Part shown: positions 13,110 through 26,562 of the stretch, piece by piece
Layout of the letters: every line of letters begins with the position of its first letter
How positions within the stretch are numbered: the stretch's first letter is position 1
Virus record (IMG/VR): IMGVR_UViG_3300046542_000227
Location: 62,001 to 126,000 of that record
Length of the DNA: 64,000 nt
Strand: one strand, 5' to 3'
Notes under the pieces: generated by a model
What the model saw: the letters and a program-made list of their open reading frames with translations, nothing else
Told to the model about the DNA's origin: nothing
The model's database searches: none
Position numbers and translations under genes: made by a program

Positions 13110-13183
13110 TAGCATGTAGCTCAGTTGGATAGAGCATCAGCATTTGACGCTGGATGTCGCGGGTTCGAATCCCGCCATGCTAT
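13110..13183 (+). tRNA. tRNA with UUG anticodon (Gln), atypical
   Basis: Acceptor tagcatg/catgcta, D arm gctc/gagc, anticodon loop atTTGac, T arm gcggg-ttcgaat-cccgc; no encoded CCA. Confidence 0.8.
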
Positions 13184-13203
13184 CTACTGACATGGTGAAA
13201 TGA

Positions 13204-15149: not shown

Positions 15150-15234
15150 GGGTAGGTTCCCGAGCGGCCAAAGGGATCAGACTGTAAATCTGACGTCTAC
15201 GACTTCGAAGGTTCGAATCCTTCTCTGCCCACCA
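15150..15234 (+). tRNA. tRNA-Tyr (GTA)
   Basis: Canonical type II cloverleaf, loop ctGTAaa, ends ACCA. Confidence 0.95.
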
Positions 15235-15235
15235 T

Positions 15236-15311
15236 TCCAGCATAGCTCAGTCGGTAGAGCAGCAGACTGTTAATCTGTTGGTCCCTGGTTCGAATCCAGG
15301 TGCTGGAGCCA
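15236..15311 (+). tRNA. tRNA-Asn (GTT)
   Basis: tccagca/tgctgga acceptor, loop ctGTTaa, ends GCCA. Confidence 0.95.
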
Positions 15312-23662: not shown

Positions 23663-25849
23663 TTACCAGCCAACAAACCCAGAGGATTGTGTTGAGTGTT
23701 TCGGAAGATCCCCTGCGAGATCGATACCGTAGTTGTTGAAGTGGGAACCCAATACTGCGTTGAATGCACCAGTATCGTCGTAGCCTGTTTGGTTGGCTAT
23801 TTCAACATCAAAATCCTCTAGTGATTCAGTAATGGCAAAGGGTGATTTGATTCCCATGATCTGCTCCACTTGCGACATGCTCCACTGGAGTATGTCCGAA
23901 GAGCGGGTAGAGATGTTAGCCTCTTCACCGGTATCCAAGTGGCACTGGTAAACAGTGGTCTGGGTGTCAGCACCGATACGGTGGATACGCGAGATTGCCT
24001 GTTCCTGAATGTAAGCACGGAACGGGGCATTGATCATGATCATGGTATCCGCCATCACCAGCGGTACAGCAGTCGACAACGAGTTGTACGTAGCGATCAA
24101 CGGATTGAGGGCTTCGTCTTGTTCGAACTTCTTGACGATCAGAGCGAGTTCATTGTTAGTCTTGCCGTATACTACCAGCGGACTCAGGTCAACGGACTTA
24201 CACTGTTCAGAAGCAGCTACCAGCGCTTCAACGAACGAGGTGAATACCAGCGTCTTCTTCATGGTAGTGTCAGCGATAGCCACGAAGTCGATGTGTTTAA
24301 CCATCTCAACGTGACACTCGATACGCTTACGTCCAAGCACACGGCCCAGACATTCACCCTGGATCTTCAGCTTGGTGTACTTGATCACCGACTTGATATC
24401 ACGGAACTCCTTCACCATCTCCTTAGGCAGGGATGGCTCGAAGTAGCGTTTCTCGTAAAGGTTAGTATACGCAATCTCTTCGCCGATGTAACGCGGGTCA
24501 GGGTTAGCGATTACCGTCTTCAACGTTTCACGGTACTTCTTGTATTCCATCTTCTGCGCTGCTGCACGCAACGTGTCTTCATGGAGTACCAAGCAGCGTT
24601 CCCAGAAACGTTCGTCATCCTTACGTCGTTTCTTGTAATACTCAACCCGTTCTTGGATAAATGCATCCATCACAGTACGGATCGCCGACAGGGTGTACAA
24701 CTTAGCCGTAGGCATCTTGACAGCAATGGTCTTCATGATCGGCTTGTCGAGCTTCAACGCCGACTTCTCGATCTTGTACGAGATCAGACCCATGCGGTTC
24801 TTCAGGATGTCCAGACCTTTGTTGCCGTCCTTACCGAAGATCTTACGGAAGCGCTCTTGCACTTGATCCGTGAACAATGGATCGAGGGTGATCAGCAACG
24901 GGATCAGTTCAGCACCCATGGCTTTAACCGGCGTACCCGAAGCTGGGATGATGTTCTTGCACTCAAGCTTCTTGCAGACTTCAATGAACTGCTGAGTCCG
25001 CATCGATTTGATCTCGTTGAGGTTGTGCGACTCATCGAGGATAATCACCGAGTTGTTAGCAGCCAATGCGCCATTGTTGATCAGGGTCAACAGCTTATCG
25101 AGGGCCTCGTAATGAACGATAACAATCCGCTCATTGTTGTAAGGCTTACCGAACTCAGCAACCCAGTAGGACTGCTGCTCTTTGTATTCCTCAACGACGG
25201 TCTTTTGCCATACGCGCTGGGTGGCGTTCTTCGGACAGATCACAATGATCTTGTCAGCATCTACACCTTCGGCTACGTACAGGGCGCCCATGGTCTTACC
25301 GGAACCTGCTGCACCGGCTAGCAGATAACCATTGAGACCGTACTGATCGACGACAGTATCGTAAGTATCGAGGAACCCATATTGGTGATCGAGTGGGGTC
25401 TTGTAGAAGCGCTTGTAGTTCGCCTTGTTCAAACGACCTACTGGATCGACAGTCGGCAGGGTCTTACCGATCCACGTCTTCTCGAACAGTTCCTTACGGA
25501 TGTTGTTGAGGACACGAACCGAAGTACCAGTTCGAGACTGGATCAACAAGTCGAGCATATAGACAACGTCAGTCGCAAAGAACTTATAGAAGCTGAAGCT
25601 ACTACGACCGAAGGTGTTGAACATGTGCATGGCGATCTTGGACGTTTTCCAGACCTTGGCCATGTCACGTTGCATGACGTCAGCAGGAACCCCTTCCACG
25701 ATAATCTCAGTGGCGGTTTCCTTTACGTTGATAGCACCGAAGGCTCGACGAAAACCTGCGAACATTTCCATGCTGGGTTGTTCGATCATAAATGCCGGAT
25801 TGAAGTGTGGCTGCCGGCCTAGCTGTGGCTCAGATAGTTGATGCTGCAT
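23663..25849 (-). CDS. SF2 (SNF2/DEAD-like) helicase
   Basis: AAGSGKT, ILDESH, ASGTP, QAISRIHRIG. Confidence 0.9.
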   Translation of the reverse strand: MQHQLSEPQLGRQPHFNPAFMIEQPSMEMFAGFRRAFGAINVKETATEIIVEGVPADVMQRDMAKVWKTSKIAMHMFNTFGRSSFSFYKFFATDVVYMLDLLIQSRTGTSVRVLNNIRKELFEKTWIGKTLPTVDPVGRLNKANYKRFYKTPLDHQYGFLDTYDTVVDQYGLNGYLLAGAAGSGKTMGALYVAEGVDADKIIVICPKNATQRVWQKTVVEEYKEQQSYWVAEFGKPYNNERIVIVHYEALDKLLTLINNGALAANNSVIILDESHNLNEIKSMRTQQFIEVCKKLECKNIIPASGTPVKAMGAELIPLLITLDPLFTDQVQERFRKIFGKDGNKGLDILKNRMGLISYKIEKSALKLDKPIMKTIAVKMPTAKLYTLSAIRTVMDAFIQERVEYYKKRRKDDERFWERCLVLHEDTLRAAAQKMEYKKYRETLKTVIANPDPRYIGEEIAYTNLYEKRYFEPSLPKEMVKEFRDIKSVIKYTKLKIQGECLGRVLGRKRIECHVEMVKHIDFVAIADTTMKKTLVFTSFVEALVAASEQCKSVDLSPLVVYGKTNNELALIVKKFEQDEALNPLIATYNSLSTAVPLVMADTMIMINAPFRAYIQEQAISRIHRIGADTQTTVYQCHLDTGEEANISTRSSDILQWSMSQVEQIMGIKSPFAITESLEDFDVEIANQTGYDDTGAFNAVLGSHFNNYGIDLAGDLPKHSTQSSGFVGW

Positions 25850-25916
25850 GGGGTGCCCTATGTTCTAAGGTAGTTAGACTATAAAATTAGCTTCTTTTGC
25901 CTAGCATGTATTGTAT

Positions 25917-26038
25917 GTACGAGGTTTCGACAGAAACCTGAGTAGGAGGTGATCCAGCTCTCGCGGTAATCGTATCCCCCGAATCACTGATGGCATTGCT
26001 GTGAAGCTGACGCCGGGCGATTCACAGGCACCTTGTAC
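25917..26038 (+). ncRNA. Candidate sRNA containing a 16S rRNA 3'-end complement
   Basis: Closing stem 25917-25/26030-38, internal hairpins, AGGAGGTGATCCAGC at 25944-58, downstream terminator. Confidence 0.5.
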
Positions 26039-26045
26039 GGTATAG

Positions 26046-26078
26046 AGCCAGCCCGGGCCCTGGGCTGGTTTTATGCCG
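26046..26078 (+). terminator. Intrinsic terminator
   Basis: agccagcccgg-gc-cctgggctggtt plus ttatgccg. Confidence 0.7.
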
Positions 26079-26086
26079 TTTAAAGC

Positions 26087-26095
26087 CTATATCAC
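26087..26095 (+). promoter_or_regulatory. Putative early promoter motif CTATATCAC
   Basis: Motif copy heading a long operon. Confidence 0.65.
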
Positions 26096-26160
26096 GAAAG
26101 GGAACATCTACTCAGCACCCTAAGTCTATATGGGGTCTGTCTCCTGTAATAGAGGCTTTT

Positions 26161-26562
26161 ATGTTAATCGATCAAATTCTAATGCACATGGCTTTAGTAC
26201 GTGGTTTACGTCTGTGCCGTGTGAGTACGCAACGCTTCGATTTGAAGACTGCTTTAGATAGCGACAAGCCAGTGATCTTCTGGCACACCAGTAATGGTAT
26301 CGACTATCTGGGCTATGAACTGCTCACCACCGATCGGTTCAATAGTCATGTGCCATTCGGTCACTTGCACAGTAAGATCGAATGCTACCACGGTGGCTAT
26401 CGTGTCCACGGTATCTGTGGTAGCTTCTTTCTGGAATATGGAGGGGTGTTGGTAAAGGCTACCGAGATATGGCCAGTTGACTTAATCGCGTATCTCGGTG
26501 ATGGCTTGGTGGATCGTTACCGAGTTGGTATATCGATGGAGCACAAACAGGTGCCGCAATGA
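26161..26562 (+). CDS. Hypothetical protein
   Basis: GAGG RBS. Confidence 0.6.
   Translation: MLIDQILMHMALVRGLRLCRVSTQRFDLKTALDSDKPVIFWHTSNGIDYLGYELLTTDRFNSHVPFGHLHSKIECYHGGYRVHGICGSFFLEYGGVLVKATEIWPVDLIAYLGDGLVDRYRVGISMEHKQVPQ

What the first reader, a model, noticed from the sequence alone, without database searches (positions are those of the whole stretch)
25914..26078. Small RNA-like unit with a 15-nt perfect complement to the 16S rRNA 3' end
Seen: AGGAGGTGATCCAGC (25944-58) lies in a unit of about 120 nt closed by gtacgaggt/accttgtac, starting at a TATG and followed by its own terminator. No start codon sits at normal spacing; the nearest ATG (about 25990) gives only MALL. Known: Pseudomonas-type 16S rRNA ends ...GCTGGATCACCTCCTTA, so pairing would extend beyond the anti-SD into helix 45. 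Inference: a ribosome-binding or decoy RNA affecting translation; GGA motifs could alternatively bind RsmA/CsrA.
Basis: partly seen in the sequence, partly recalled or inferred. Interest (0 to 1): 0.7.

Follow-up and report, generated by a model that had tools for sequence, protein, structure and literature searches.

The report
Phage small RNA complementary to 16S tail
A jumbo phage of Pseudomonas carries a self-contained, structured small-RNA gene whose exposed segment is a near-perfect complement of the free 3' end of the host's 16S ribosomal RNA. I found the same RNA in ten other nucleus-forming jumbo phages, phiKZ included, so it looks like a previously undescribed way for phages to grip the ribosome's mRNA-docking site.

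Summary
AGGAGGTGATCCAGC lies at 25944-25958 (+), once in the 267-kb phage genome. It is complementary to the Pseudomonas 16S 3' end, which I checked on a real 16S gene.

It sits in a roughly 160-nt unit (25917-26077):
- a TATG start of the phiKZ-polymerase type;
- closing helix P1, hairpin P2 and hairpin P3 with a GNRA-type cap;
- a phiKZ-type terminator (hairpin followed by TTATGCC).

The unit is non-coding: there is a 1-nt indel between relatives and no conserved ORF or start codon. The helices covary.

An iterated covariance model finds the same RNA in phiKZ, PS119XW, PhiPA3, 201phi2-1, Psa21, Phabio, Noxifer, pPa_SNUABM_DT01 and two metagenomic relatives, plus a shorter version in E. coli phage Goslar. 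Almost everything has diverged except AGG[A/G]GGUGAUCC. The one variable base keeps pairing with U1537 (A-U or G.U). Contiguous complementarity to 16S runs 12-21 nt, always covering nt 1529-1540, against 4-6 nt for this phage's real ribosome-binding sites.

No Rfam family matches, and no paper I could search describes it.

Most likely it is a trans-acting, untranslated "super-Shine-Dalgarno" RNA that binds the anti-SD tail of 30S subunits. Binding, transcription and the downstream effect are inferred, not shown. The RsmA-sponge alternative is not supported.

The parts
25873..25917 (+). Conserved promoter-like block. It contains AAAATTAGC (25883-25891), which resembles the phiKZ middle-promoter motif AAanTTACc, and ATTGTATG ending in TATG (25914-25917), the phiKZ late-type start motif in which G is +1.
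   Evidence: The block is invariant in Noxifer, UViG_3300042013_000067 and L011 apart from a 6-nt spacer. TATTGTATGTAC is shared with pPa_SNUABM_DT01. The motif definitions come from PMC4666361. The start site is inferred, not mapped; G25908 is an alternative.
25917..26038 (+). Core of the small RNA (122 nt), a three-way junction P1/P2/P3. It is matched end to end by family covariance model R3.
   Evidence: R3 scores 82.7 bits (E 1e-18), the only hit in the 267-kb genome. The + strand folds with z = -4.8 against -2.2 for the - strand. G.U pairs in the helices fix the + strand.
25917..25924 (+). P1 5' strand (GUACGAGG). It pairs with 26031-26038.
   Evidence: Family alignment A9: 5 of the 8 P1 pairs show compensatory double changes and 93.8% of cells are paired. 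The N-type alignment gives 100% paired.
25925..25936 (+). P2 hairpin (UUUC-GACA-GAAA). It can extend to GGUUUC/GAAACC, 25923-25938, at the expense of the inner P1 pairs.
   Evidence: All 4 P2 pairs show double changes across the family. In the N-type set there are 2 compensatory pairs.
25944..25959 (+). The segment complementary to 16S. AGGAGGUGAUCCAGC, plus U as a wobble pair, complements 16S nt 1525-1540 (E. coli numbering): the whole single-stranded tail except its last two bases, plus the last helix-45 base pairs.
   Evidence: It lies in the junction strand between P2 and P3. Keeping it unpaired costs 2.5-8 kcal/mol in the family. Net predicted binding to the 21-nt tail is -15.8 kcal/mol for the window RNA, after the cost of opening.
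25960..25980 (+). Rest of the junction strand. CUCGCGGU is invariant in the Noxifer group, followed by a variable loop and CCCCC. It may form a small hairpin (UCGCGG/CCCCGA). A 1-nt indel in one relative falls here.
   Evidence: The role of this segment is unknown. CTCGCGG also occurs in the Goslar unit.
25981..26023 (+). P3, a long hairpin: outer helix GAAUCACU/GGCGAUUC, middle UGGC/GCCG, and apical GCU-GUGA-AGC with a GNRA-type tetraloop at 26001-26004.
   Evidence: Four compensatory pairs in the N-type set. Across the family the outer helix differs in sequence, and the apical loop is GUGA, GAGA, GCGA or GGGA.
26024..26038 (+). Junction ACAGGCA followed by the P1 3' strand CCUUGUAC.
   Evidence: (A/G)CCUUG is conserved family-wide.
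26039..26077 (+). Intrinsic terminator of the phiKZ type: a long GC-rich hairpin followed by UUUUAUGCC.
   Evidence: The fold is. The published phiKZ terminator consensus ends ...YTTATKYYGT. The hairpin sequence differs but hairpin plus TTAT(G/T)CC is kept in all relatives.
26080..26132 (+). Separate promoter block for the next gene, not part of the RNA: CTATATCAC (26087-26095) and TATATG (26127-26132).
   Evidence: CTATATCAC occurs 13 times in the genome, always on the + strand and mostly upstream of genes. The phiKZ, Psa21 and Phabio units are followed by CTATATTAC.
26161..26562 (+). Downstream 133-aa ORF with its own GAGG ribosome-binding site. It is a neighbour, not part of the unit.
   Evidence: It is only 28.6% identical to Noxifer gp314, while neighbouring proteins are 72-85% identical.
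23663..25849 (-). Divergently transcribed SNF2-family helicase (homologue of phiKZ gp203). It serves as a synteny anchor and is not part of the unit.

Best explanation
The unit is a stand-alone gene for a stable, structured, non-coding RNA, about 160 nt here and 150-190 nt in relatives, conserved in Pseudomonas-infecting nucleus-forming jumbo phages. It is probably made by the phage's own non-virion RNA polymerase from a TATG/TATAG start and ended by a phiKZ-type terminator. Its 5' end is locked into closing helix P1.

Between hairpins P2 and P3 it displays AGG(A/G)GGUGAUCC(AG..), the complement of the whole free 3' tail of 16S rRNA, far longer than any real ribosome-binding site and with no start codon behind it.

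Most likely it works in trans. It base-pairs with the anti-Shine-Dalgarno tail of 30S subunits very stably and without leading to initiation. That occupies the mRNA-docking site, titrating or parking 30S subunits and so re-weighting which mRNAs can initiate. The ribosome may in turn stabilise the RNA.

Shown here:
- the sequence and its uniqueness in the genome;
- its non-coding nature;
- the covarying structure;
- family-wide conservation of exactly the 16S-complementary bases;
- predicted energetics.

Inferred:
- transcription and the RNA's ends;
- binding to 30S in vivo;
- the consequence for translation.
For: 1. Exact complementarity to a real Pseudomonas 16S end: 15 nt, or 16 with a wobble pair. 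It is the top-ranked site in the genome.
2. The family has 12 members. R1 was built from 4 Noxifer-type cores and finds Psa21 (E 0.003). R2, without them in the training set, finds 201phi2-1, PS119XW, PhiPA3 and phiKZ at 22-26 bits (E 1e-4 to 9e-4), end to end at the predicted boundaries. R3 finds DT01 at 47.5 bits (E 2e-9).
3. Structure: 93.5% of cells are paired against 28-41% when partners are slid; 16 of 22 pairs carry double changes; 0 of 500 shuffles reach this.
4. Apart from the helices, only the 12-mer is conserved. Its one variable position is A or G, both of which pair with U1537. The flanks extend pairing to 12-21 contiguous nt, always covering 1529-1540.
5. The phage's own ORFs have 4-6 nt complements upstream of their starts, 10 nt at most.
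6. There is no conserved ORF, and there is a 1-nt indel.
7. The unit has its own promoter-like block and terminator. The next gene has a separate promoter and differs between phages.
8. Net predicted binding to the 21-nt tail is -16 to -24 kcal/mol after opening costs. Exposing the motif costs only 2.5-8 kcal/mol.
Against: - There is no expression evidence for this phage. The only RNA-library contigs also span the promoter or are probably DNA.
- No binding data exist.
- In minimum-energy folds the motif is partly paired (mean unpaired probability 0.33-0.56).
- The phage's own genes use Shine-Dalgarno sites, so blanket blocking of the anti-SD would also hurt the phage. A purely inhibitory role needs dosage, timing or localisation control.
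- Pairing beyond nt 1529 requires opening the base of helix 45 in a folded 30S.
- The family is absent from EL and from the ten non-Pseudomonas relatives searched, so it is not universal in the phage family.
- The single non-Pseudomonas member, Goslar, neither supports nor refutes tracking of the host's 16S sequence.
Confidence: 0.5

Rival explanations
1. Protective cap. The RNA still pairs with the 16S tail, but its purpose is to turn the single-stranded 3' end into a duplex. Host 3'-to-5' exonucleases (30S decay by RNase R starts at this end) or single-strand-specific rRNA-cutting toxins could then not destroy ribosomes the phage needs. The bound subunits would form a protected reserve.
For: - Pairing reaches A1542 (phiKZ, PS119XW, PhiPA3, DT01), U1541 (201phi2-1, Psa21, Phabio) or U1540 (Noxifer group, Goslar), leaving at most a 2-nt overhang.
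- The paper on 30S degradation by RNase R (PMC10901742) and the one on removal of the anti-SD by a MazF toxin (PMC12274833) appeared in searches; I saw their titles and abstracts only.
- This role fits a phage that itself depends on SD-led translation.
Against: There is no evidence that ribosome decay or anti-SD cleavage is triggered in these infections. A capped 30S cannot use SD-led mRNAs until the RNA is released. This is entirely inferential.
Confidence: 0.15
2. Antisense to the unfolded 16S 3' minor domain. The RNA pairs with nascent or immature 16S, or with released 3' fragments, through two blocks: the tail (nt 1522-1542) and nt ~1497-1514. That opens helix 45 and blocks late 30S maturation, or marks the duplex for a double-strand RNase.
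For: - In phiKZ-type members the strand CUACGG(N)GCCUUG complements 16S 1501-1514. For 5 of 6 of them this is the best or near-best site in the whole 16S.
- Cofolding with the last 49 nt of 16S predicts 35-39 intermolecular pairs.
- Tail pairing extends 2-8 nt into helix 45.
Against: - The second block is only marginally significant: local-alignment p is about 0.03 in three related members and not significant in the others.
- The gain over shuffled 16S heads is within noise except for 201phi2-1 (1 of 60) and PS119XW (5 of 60).
- The same bases form P1, which explains their conservation.
- The second block is absent or weak in the Noxifer group, Phabio and Goslar.
Confidence: 0.1
3. Cis-acting leader. 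The unit is a 5' element of read-through mRNAs, acting as a ribosome-binding stabiliser or standby site, or as an attenuator for the downstream gene.
For: The unit is co-directional with the next gene in all phages examined. In PhiPA3 it lies directly upstream of the helicase gene. Many phiKZ small RNAs are reported as products of premature termination in 5'UTRs.
Against: A strong terminator is followed by a separate, recurrent promoter motif before the next gene. The downstream genes are unrelated between phages: a 133-aa ORF, gp204, gp305 and the helicase, while in Goslar and DT01 the unit follows a stop codon. The adjacent ORF evolves fast while the RNA is conserved.
Confidence: 0.1
4. It is the ribosome-binding site of a tiny or non-canonically started ORF.
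For: GUG AUC CAG (M-I-Q) overlaps the motif in all members.
Against: - The GUG abuts the GGAGG with no spacer.
- The frame ends after 4 to more than 60 codons, with unrelated sequence in different members.
- A 1-nt indel occurs in a close relative.
- Substitutions are compensatory in helices, not synonymous.
Confidence: 0.03
5. It is an RsmA/CsrA (or other RNA-binding-protein) sponge that uses GGA motifs.
For: There is one AGGA in the motif (Noxifer group, Psa21, Phabio, Goslar), or a GGA in the P3 apical loop of some phiKZ-type members.
Against: Each RNA has 0-2 GGA, and 201phi2-1 has none. The motif's GGA is replaced by GGG in half the members. The conserved GUGAUCC part is irrelevant to RsmA. 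Binding by some unknown protein cannot be excluded.
Confidence: 0.04

Closest known systems
STAB-SD / 5' stabiliser elements of Gram-positive mRNAs (e.g. cryIIIA leader; recalled from memory, not checked here)
   Same: A Shine-Dalgarno-like sequence with no start codon behind it, thought to bind the 16S 3' end without initiating translation.
   Different: Those are short (about 9 nt) cis elements inside an mRNA leader. This is a self-contained, terminated small-RNA gene with a covarying three-way junction, 12-21 nt of complementarity, phage-encoded and in Gram-negative hosts.
6S RNA (decoy of RNA polymerase holoenzyme)
   Same: The concept: a stable structured RNA that imitates the normal nucleic-acid ligand of a core machine and occupies its binding site.
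   Different: The target here would be the 30S anti-SD tail, not RNA polymerase. There is no sequence or structure relation, and no Rfam match.
CsrB/RsmY/RsmZ sponges
   Same: Non-coding RNAs that present SD-like GGA motifs.
   Different: Those carry many GGA loops and bind a protein. This RNA has 0-2 GGA, and its conserved element is the full rRNA complement.
Ribosome-associated non-coding RNAs and tRNA fragments that bind the small subunit (e.g. Val-tRF; PMC11009984, seen in one search)
   Same: A trans-acting small RNA proposed to bind the small subunit and compete with mRNA.
   Different: Those are processing fragments that bind near the decoding site. This is a dedicated phage gene using Watson-Crick pairing with the anti-SD tail.
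Small-RNA candidates reported for phiKZ and 201phi2-1 by Grad-seq and ONT-cappable-seq (bioRxiv 10.1101/2020.12.06.403469; PMC10914365; PMC11512511)
   Same: The same phages, the same kind of short promoter-to-terminator transcripts. The phiKZ (NC_004629 about 212854-213039) and 201phi2-1 (NC_010821 about 229020-229201) copies may be among the 17 and 11 listed candidates.
   Different: The candidates named in the text lie elsewhere (PHIKZ297/298, p40, PHIKZ221, PHIKZ302, gp182/gp277). No text I could read mentions this locus or any 16S complementarity. The supplementary tables are not held.
Rfam RF01867 CC2171 (Caulobacter sRNA)
   Same: It shares AGGAGGUGAUCCAG followed by a terminator.
   Different: It scores 16.7 bits against a gathering threshold of 75. 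In CC2171 a GUG follows at normal spacing, so it looks like an ordinary strong ribosome-binding site.

Membership tests
Any Rfam 15 family | Score at or above the family's gathering threshold | tested here: not met
   Window 25600-26400: nothing reaches gathering; the best is CC2171 at 16.7 against 75. Nine loci holding other family members give zero matches at gathering.
tRNA / tmRNA | Cloverleaf or tmRNA detected by ARAGORN | tested here: not met
   The only tRNAs are at 13110-13184, 15150-15234 and 15236-15311.
New family defined here (chimallivirus 16S-tail-complementary sRNA) | End-to-end match to a covariance model built without the sequence being tested | tested here: met
   R2 finds the held-out 201phi2-1, PS119XW, PhiPA3 and phiKZ at 22-26 bits. 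R3 finds DT01 at 47.5 bits. The window scores 82.7 bits with R3, but it is a training member.
New family defined here | P1/P2/P3 helices supported by covariation | tested here: met
   16 of 22 pairs carry double changes; 93.5% of cells are paired against 28-41% with slid partners; 0 of 500 shuffles reach this. That alignment is fitted to the model, but the independent MAFFT alignment of the Noxifer group gives the same result.
New family defined here | At least 12 contiguous nt complementary to 16S nt 1529-1540, in the junction strand after P2 | tested here: met
   All 12 members have it; lengths are 12-21 nt.
phiKZ-type transcription unit | TATG-type start motif and hairpin+TTATKYY terminator | tested here: met
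   Sequence match only. Transcript ends are not mapped.
CsrA/RsmA sponge RNA (RsmY/RsmZ type) | Several GGA motifs presented in loops | tested here: not met
   0-2 GGA per member, and none in 201phi2-1.
Small-protein mRNA / leader peptide | Start codon 4-13 nt after the SD core, opening a conserved reading frame | tested here: not met
   There is no such codon. The overlapping GUG frame varies from 4 to more than 60 codons, and there is a 1-nt indel.
Cis 5' stabiliser (STAB-SD type) | The element is part of the 5'UTR of the mRNA it stabilises | tested here: inconclusive
   A terminator and a separate promoter lie before the next gene. Read-through cannot be measured here.
Ribosome-associated ncRNA | Physical association with ribosomes or 30S subunits | not testable with these tools
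   Only predicted energies are available.

The most novel reading that the evidence does not exclude
Nucleus-forming jumbo phages of Pseudomonas, including the model phage phiKZ, encode a dedicated decoy or cap RNA for the ribosome. It is a stable three-way-junction RNA that clamps the entire anti-Shine-Dalgarno tail of 16S rRNA, and possibly the base of helix 45, to reprogram, park or protect host 30S subunits during infection. That would make it a counterpart, for the ribosome, of what 6S RNA is for RNA polymerase.
Probability: 0.4. Interest if true: 0.9.

Novelty: categorically new. Interest (0 to 1): 0.82.

Why it matters
If the RNA binds 30S as its conservation pattern implies, it would be the first dedicated, genetically encoded small RNA whose target is the ribosome's mRNA-docking sequence itself. 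It would also add an RNA layer to ribosome takeover by phiKZ-like phages, which are already known to send proteins to host ribosomes.

It is directly testable in tractable systems: phiKZ on P. aeruginosa PAO1 and Noxifer on P. fluorescens SBW25. Public Grad-seq and long-read RNA data already exist to check against the coordinates given here.

It would also yield a compact natural module for titrating or tagging 30S subunits. Finally, it bears on an open question: how these phages bias translation when their mRNAs must leave the phage nucleus and compete for host ribosomes.

Tried and rejected
- **Known RNA families.** Rfam and ARAGORN give no known family.
- **Consensus promoter/terminator scan.** The sigma-70 and simple terminator scan found nothing relevant; these phages use their own signals.
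- **Exact 23-nt pattern in public collections.** No bacterial genome has it. Viral and metagenome scans return only close relatives plus one coding chance match, L012.
- **Shorter patterns in IMG/VR.** These return hundreds of hits, mostly coding (GGA GGT GAT CC encodes Gly-Gly-Asp-Pro), so the 12-15-mer alone is not diagnostic.
- **Sequencing runs.** DNA runs hold only low-coverage phage contigs. RNA-labelled runs hold diverged relatives but give no usable evidence of transcription.
- **MAFFT alignments across subfamilies** were too poor for direct structure calls. Iterated covariance models replaced them.
- **Second complementarity to 16S 1497-1514.** Suggestive, but not significant in controls.
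- **Link to phiKZ gp206**, which co-sediments with 50S. No homologue is detectable near the window RNA.
- **Other phages.** Motif and model searches in EL, RAY, Moabite, FBKp24, RP12, pEa_SNUABM_54, KpHz_2, Miami, Aphrodite1 and ZPAH34, and in a partial relative (G001), found nothing significant.
- **Primer contamination.** The motif equals the universal 16S reverse primer. I rejected contamination because independent genomes carry variant forms in the same structural context.
Full report
**What is in the window.** The window is bases 62001-126000 of a 267,320-bp viral genome with terminal repeats. Its nearest named relative is Pseudomonas phage Noxifer; the flanking SNF2 helicase also matches phiKZ gp203, 201phi2-1 gp300 and PhiPA3 gp233. 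This is therefore a phiKZ-like, nucleus-forming jumbo phage, almost certainly of a Pseudomonas host.

The finding lies in a 311-nt divergent intergenic region. On one side is the helicase (23663-25849, - strand) and on the other a 133-aa ORF (26161-26562, + strand).

**Observation check.** AGGAGGTGATCCAGC is at 25944-25958 (+). It is the only match in the window even with two mismatches allowed, where 0.11 are expected by chance. The 12-mer core occurs once in the whole genome.

I took a real 16S end from a Pseudomonas putida chromosome. The Rfam small-subunit model ends exactly at ...CTGCGGCTGGATCACCTCCTTA. The 15-mer is its exact complement, and the next base adds a G.U pair.

In a scan of the entire phage genome, both strands, for duplex stability with the last 25 nt of 16S, this site ranks first.

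**It is a transcription unit of its own (inferred from sequence).**
- Upstream signals. A block (25873-25917) is almost invariant in three relatives. It holds AAAATTAGC and ATTGTATG.
- Published phiKZ rules. Late promoters are TATG with the G as +1, and middle promoters carry AAanTTACc centred about -24 (PMC4666361). With G25917 as +1 the RNA begins exactly at the first base of closing helix P1.
- The same layout in relatives. TATAG or TATG sits immediately before the P1 strand in every family member. phiKZ-type members also have an AA..TTAC-like motif about 18-20 nt upstream. G25908 is an alternative start.
- Downstream end. The hairpin plus UUUUAUGCC (26039-26077) fits the phiKZ terminator consensus ending YTTATKYYGT. 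In relatives the hairpin sequence changes while the hairpin and the TTAT(G/T)CC tail remain.
- The next gene has its own promoter. After the terminator comes CTATATCAC, a 9-mer found 13 times in this genome, always on the + strand and mostly before genes. It reads CTATATTAC after the phiKZ, Psa21 and Phabio units.

**Not coding, and which strand.** No start codon follows the GGAGG at usable spacing. The overlapping GUG-AUC-CAG frame stops after 4 to more than 60 codons with unrelated sequence in different phages, and a close relative has a 1-nt indel in the middle of the unit.

The + strand folds far better than shuffles (z = -4.8) and better than the - strand (z = -2.2). Several conserved G.U pairs would be A.C mismatches on the other strand.

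**Structure.** In the Noxifer group (window, a metagenomic near-twin, Noxifer, one IMG/VR genome) the RNA folds as follows:
- P1 closes the 5' and 3' ends of the core.
- P2 is a hairpin directly stacked on P1.
- A long single-stranded junction carries the motif.
- P3 is a long hairpin capped by GCU-GNGA-AGC.

On a plain MAFFT alignment, 96.7% of pair cells are standard pairs against 30-44% when partners are slid. Eleven pairs change on both sides, and no shuffle reaches this.

**A family.** A pattern search for the motif with one mismatch turned up GGGGGTGATCC in intergenic DNA next to the helicase gene of phiKZ, 201phi2-1 and PhiPA3. Further searches found PS119XW, Psa21 and Phabio and a unit in E. 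coli phage Goslar. The cores are 112-122 nt long (Goslar 87 nt) despite near-total sequence divergence.

| Model | Built from | What it finds |
|---|---|---|
| R1 | four Noxifer-type cores | Psa21 end to end (19.2 bits, E 0.003); Goslar and Phabio weakly |
| R2 | those plus Psa21, Phabio, Goslar | held-out 201phi2-1, PS119XW, PhiPA3, phiKZ at 22-26 bits (E 1e-4 to 9e-4), exactly at the boundaries I had drawn by eye |
| R3 | all ten | one copy in the window's genome (82.7 bits); a new member in P. aeruginosa phage pPa_SNUABM_DT01 (47.5 bits) |

On the ten-member alignment, 16 of 22 pairs show double changes and 93.5% of cells pair against 28-41% slid. This alignment is model-fitted, so it leans towards the structure. 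The P3 cap is GUGA, GAGA, GCGA or GGGA, that is GNRA-like, in most members.

No significant hit was found in the complete genomes of EL, RAY, Moabite, FBKp24, RP12, pEa_SNUABM_54, KpHz_2, Miami, Aphrodite1 and ZPAH34, nor in a partial metagenomic relative. The position of the unit varies: beside the helicase, 1.6 kb away from it, upstream of it on the same strand, or elsewhere. So does the downstream gene. It behaves as an independent module.

**What is conserved is the rRNA complement.** Outside the helices the one conserved string is AGG(A/G)GGUGAUCC. Its only variable base is A in six members and G in six. Both pair with U1537; C and U never occur.

| Member | Contiguous pairing with 16S (Watson-Crick plus G.U) |
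|---|---|
| Goslar (against a real E. coli 16S end) | 12 nt |
| UViG67, Phabio | 14 nt |
| window, L011, Noxifer | 16 nt |
| 201phi2-1, DT01 | 17 nt |
| PhiPA3 | 18 nt |
| PS119XW, Psa21 | 19 nt |
| phiKZ | 21 nt |

Nt 1529-1540 are always covered. That is the whole single-stranded tail except its last one or two bases, plus 2-8 bases of helix 45 in the Pseudomonas phages.

By contrast, 263 crude ORFs of this phage have 4-6-nt complements before their starts, 10 nt at most. Holding the motif single-stranded costs 2.5-8 kcal/mol. Net predicted binding to the 21-nt tail is -16 to -24 kcal/mol.

**Mechanism.** The simplest reading is a trans-acting, untranslated "super-SD" RNA that pairs with the anti-SD tail of 30S subunits. 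A duplex this long, with no start codon, should hold the subunit without initiation. It would occupy the mRNA-docking site, and the 5' end locked in P1 together with the terminator hairpin should make the RNA long-lived.

The phage's own genes use SD sites. A blanket block would therefore be costly, so dosage, timing (a middle or late promoter) or a different pay-off must be involved. The alternatives that keep the same binding step or the same sequence features are:
- capping the 16S 3' end against exonucleases or tail-cutting toxins;
- antisense action on immature 16S;
- a cis leader role.

The two-block antisense idea came from noticing that CUACGG(N)GCCUUG of phiKZ-type members complements 16S 1501-1514. 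That is the best site in the whole 16S for several members, and cofolding predicts 35-39 intermolecular pairs. But the controls are weak and the same bases form P1. I rate it as suggestive only.

The small-ORF and RsmA-sponge readings fail their defining tests.

**Known or new.** No Rfam family matches the window unit or the nine member loci I scanned. Full-text searches on phiKZ non-coding RNAs, anti-SD small RNAs and the motif itself found:
- lists of phiKZ and 201phi2-1 small-RNA candidates, but none at this locus in the readable text and no mention of 16S complementarity;
- for the motif, only 16S primer listings.

The supplementary tables that list all candidates are not held, so the transcript may already have been seen as an anonymous candidate. 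The family, its structure and its rRNA complementarity appear to be undescribed.

**Limits.**
- There is no transcription or binding evidence for any member from the tools I had.
- E-values from the short calibrations are rough.
- The family members are related, so counts of "cells" are not independent events.
- Only one non-Pseudomonas member exists, so tracking of the host's 16S sequence is untested.

Noticed in passing
window 26087-26095, plus 12 other sites in the genome (e.g. window 8762, 11036, 31999, 51257, 60905): CTATATCAC occurs 13 times in the 267-kb genome, always on the + strand and mostly just upstream of genes, usually preceded by (A/G)AG(A/G)N. It is probably this phage's version of the phiKZ early-promoter box (CTATATTAC in phiKZ, Psa21 and Phabio).
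   Followed up: partly
L001:3677-4207 (Noxifer gp314) versus window 26161-26562: The annotated start of Noxifer gp314 lies inside the conserved promoter block. The aligned ATG preceded by GGAGG, about 110 nt further on, looks like the real start. The protein is only 28.6% identical between the two phages, while neighbours are 72-85% identical: a fast-evolving gene beside a conserved RNA.
   Followed up: partly
IMG/VR loci L189, L191, L193, L195, L205, L209, L220, L224, L225, L236, L244, L247, L253, L255 (and L194, L201, L211, L212, L226, L228, L231, L234, L240, L251, L262): Many unrelated 11-46-kb viral contigs share a non-coding-looking AGGAGGTGATCCAACATC..., often followed by TTGACT..TATAAAT. 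Read on the other strand this is the enterobacterial-type 16S 3' end (GTTGGATCACCTCCT). It may be another rRNA-end-related element.
   Followed up: no
window 25910-25957 and 26072-26112, in runs X25, X26 and X28: Wastewater libraries hold abundant diverged relatives (contig word depth up to about 1,700). These keep the 5' part of the RNA including the motif, and the downstream promoter. The 114 nt in between are replaced by 113 unalignable letters: same size, different sequence. More family variants therefore exist than the collections returned.
   Followed up: partly
window 13110-13184, 15150-15234, 15236-15311: Three phage tRNA genes: Gln-TTG, Tyr-GTA and Asn-GTT.
   Followed up: no
L024:4823-5533 (phiKZ gp206), 1.4 kb downstream of the phiKZ copy: phiKZ gp206 is reported to co-sediment with 50S subunits (PMC10914614). 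blastp detects no homologue next to the window RNA or in 201phi2-1 gp301-305, so no link could be made.
   Followed up: partly
L066:1460-1546 (-), Goslar NC_048170 87320-87406: The Goslar unit is shorter (87 nt) and has no P3. Its GGAGGU can pair with AUCUCC just downstream, and it shares CUCGCGG with the Noxifer group. It lies after a stop codon, far from the helicase gene.
   Followed up: partly
L012 (metagenome) and L238 (IMG/VR): Two GC-rich coding regions carry 23-26-nt strings almost identical to the motif plus UCUCGCGG of the Noxifer group (encoding ..EVIQFSR.. and ..EEVIQPLAV..). I take these as chance or coding convergence.
   Followed up: no
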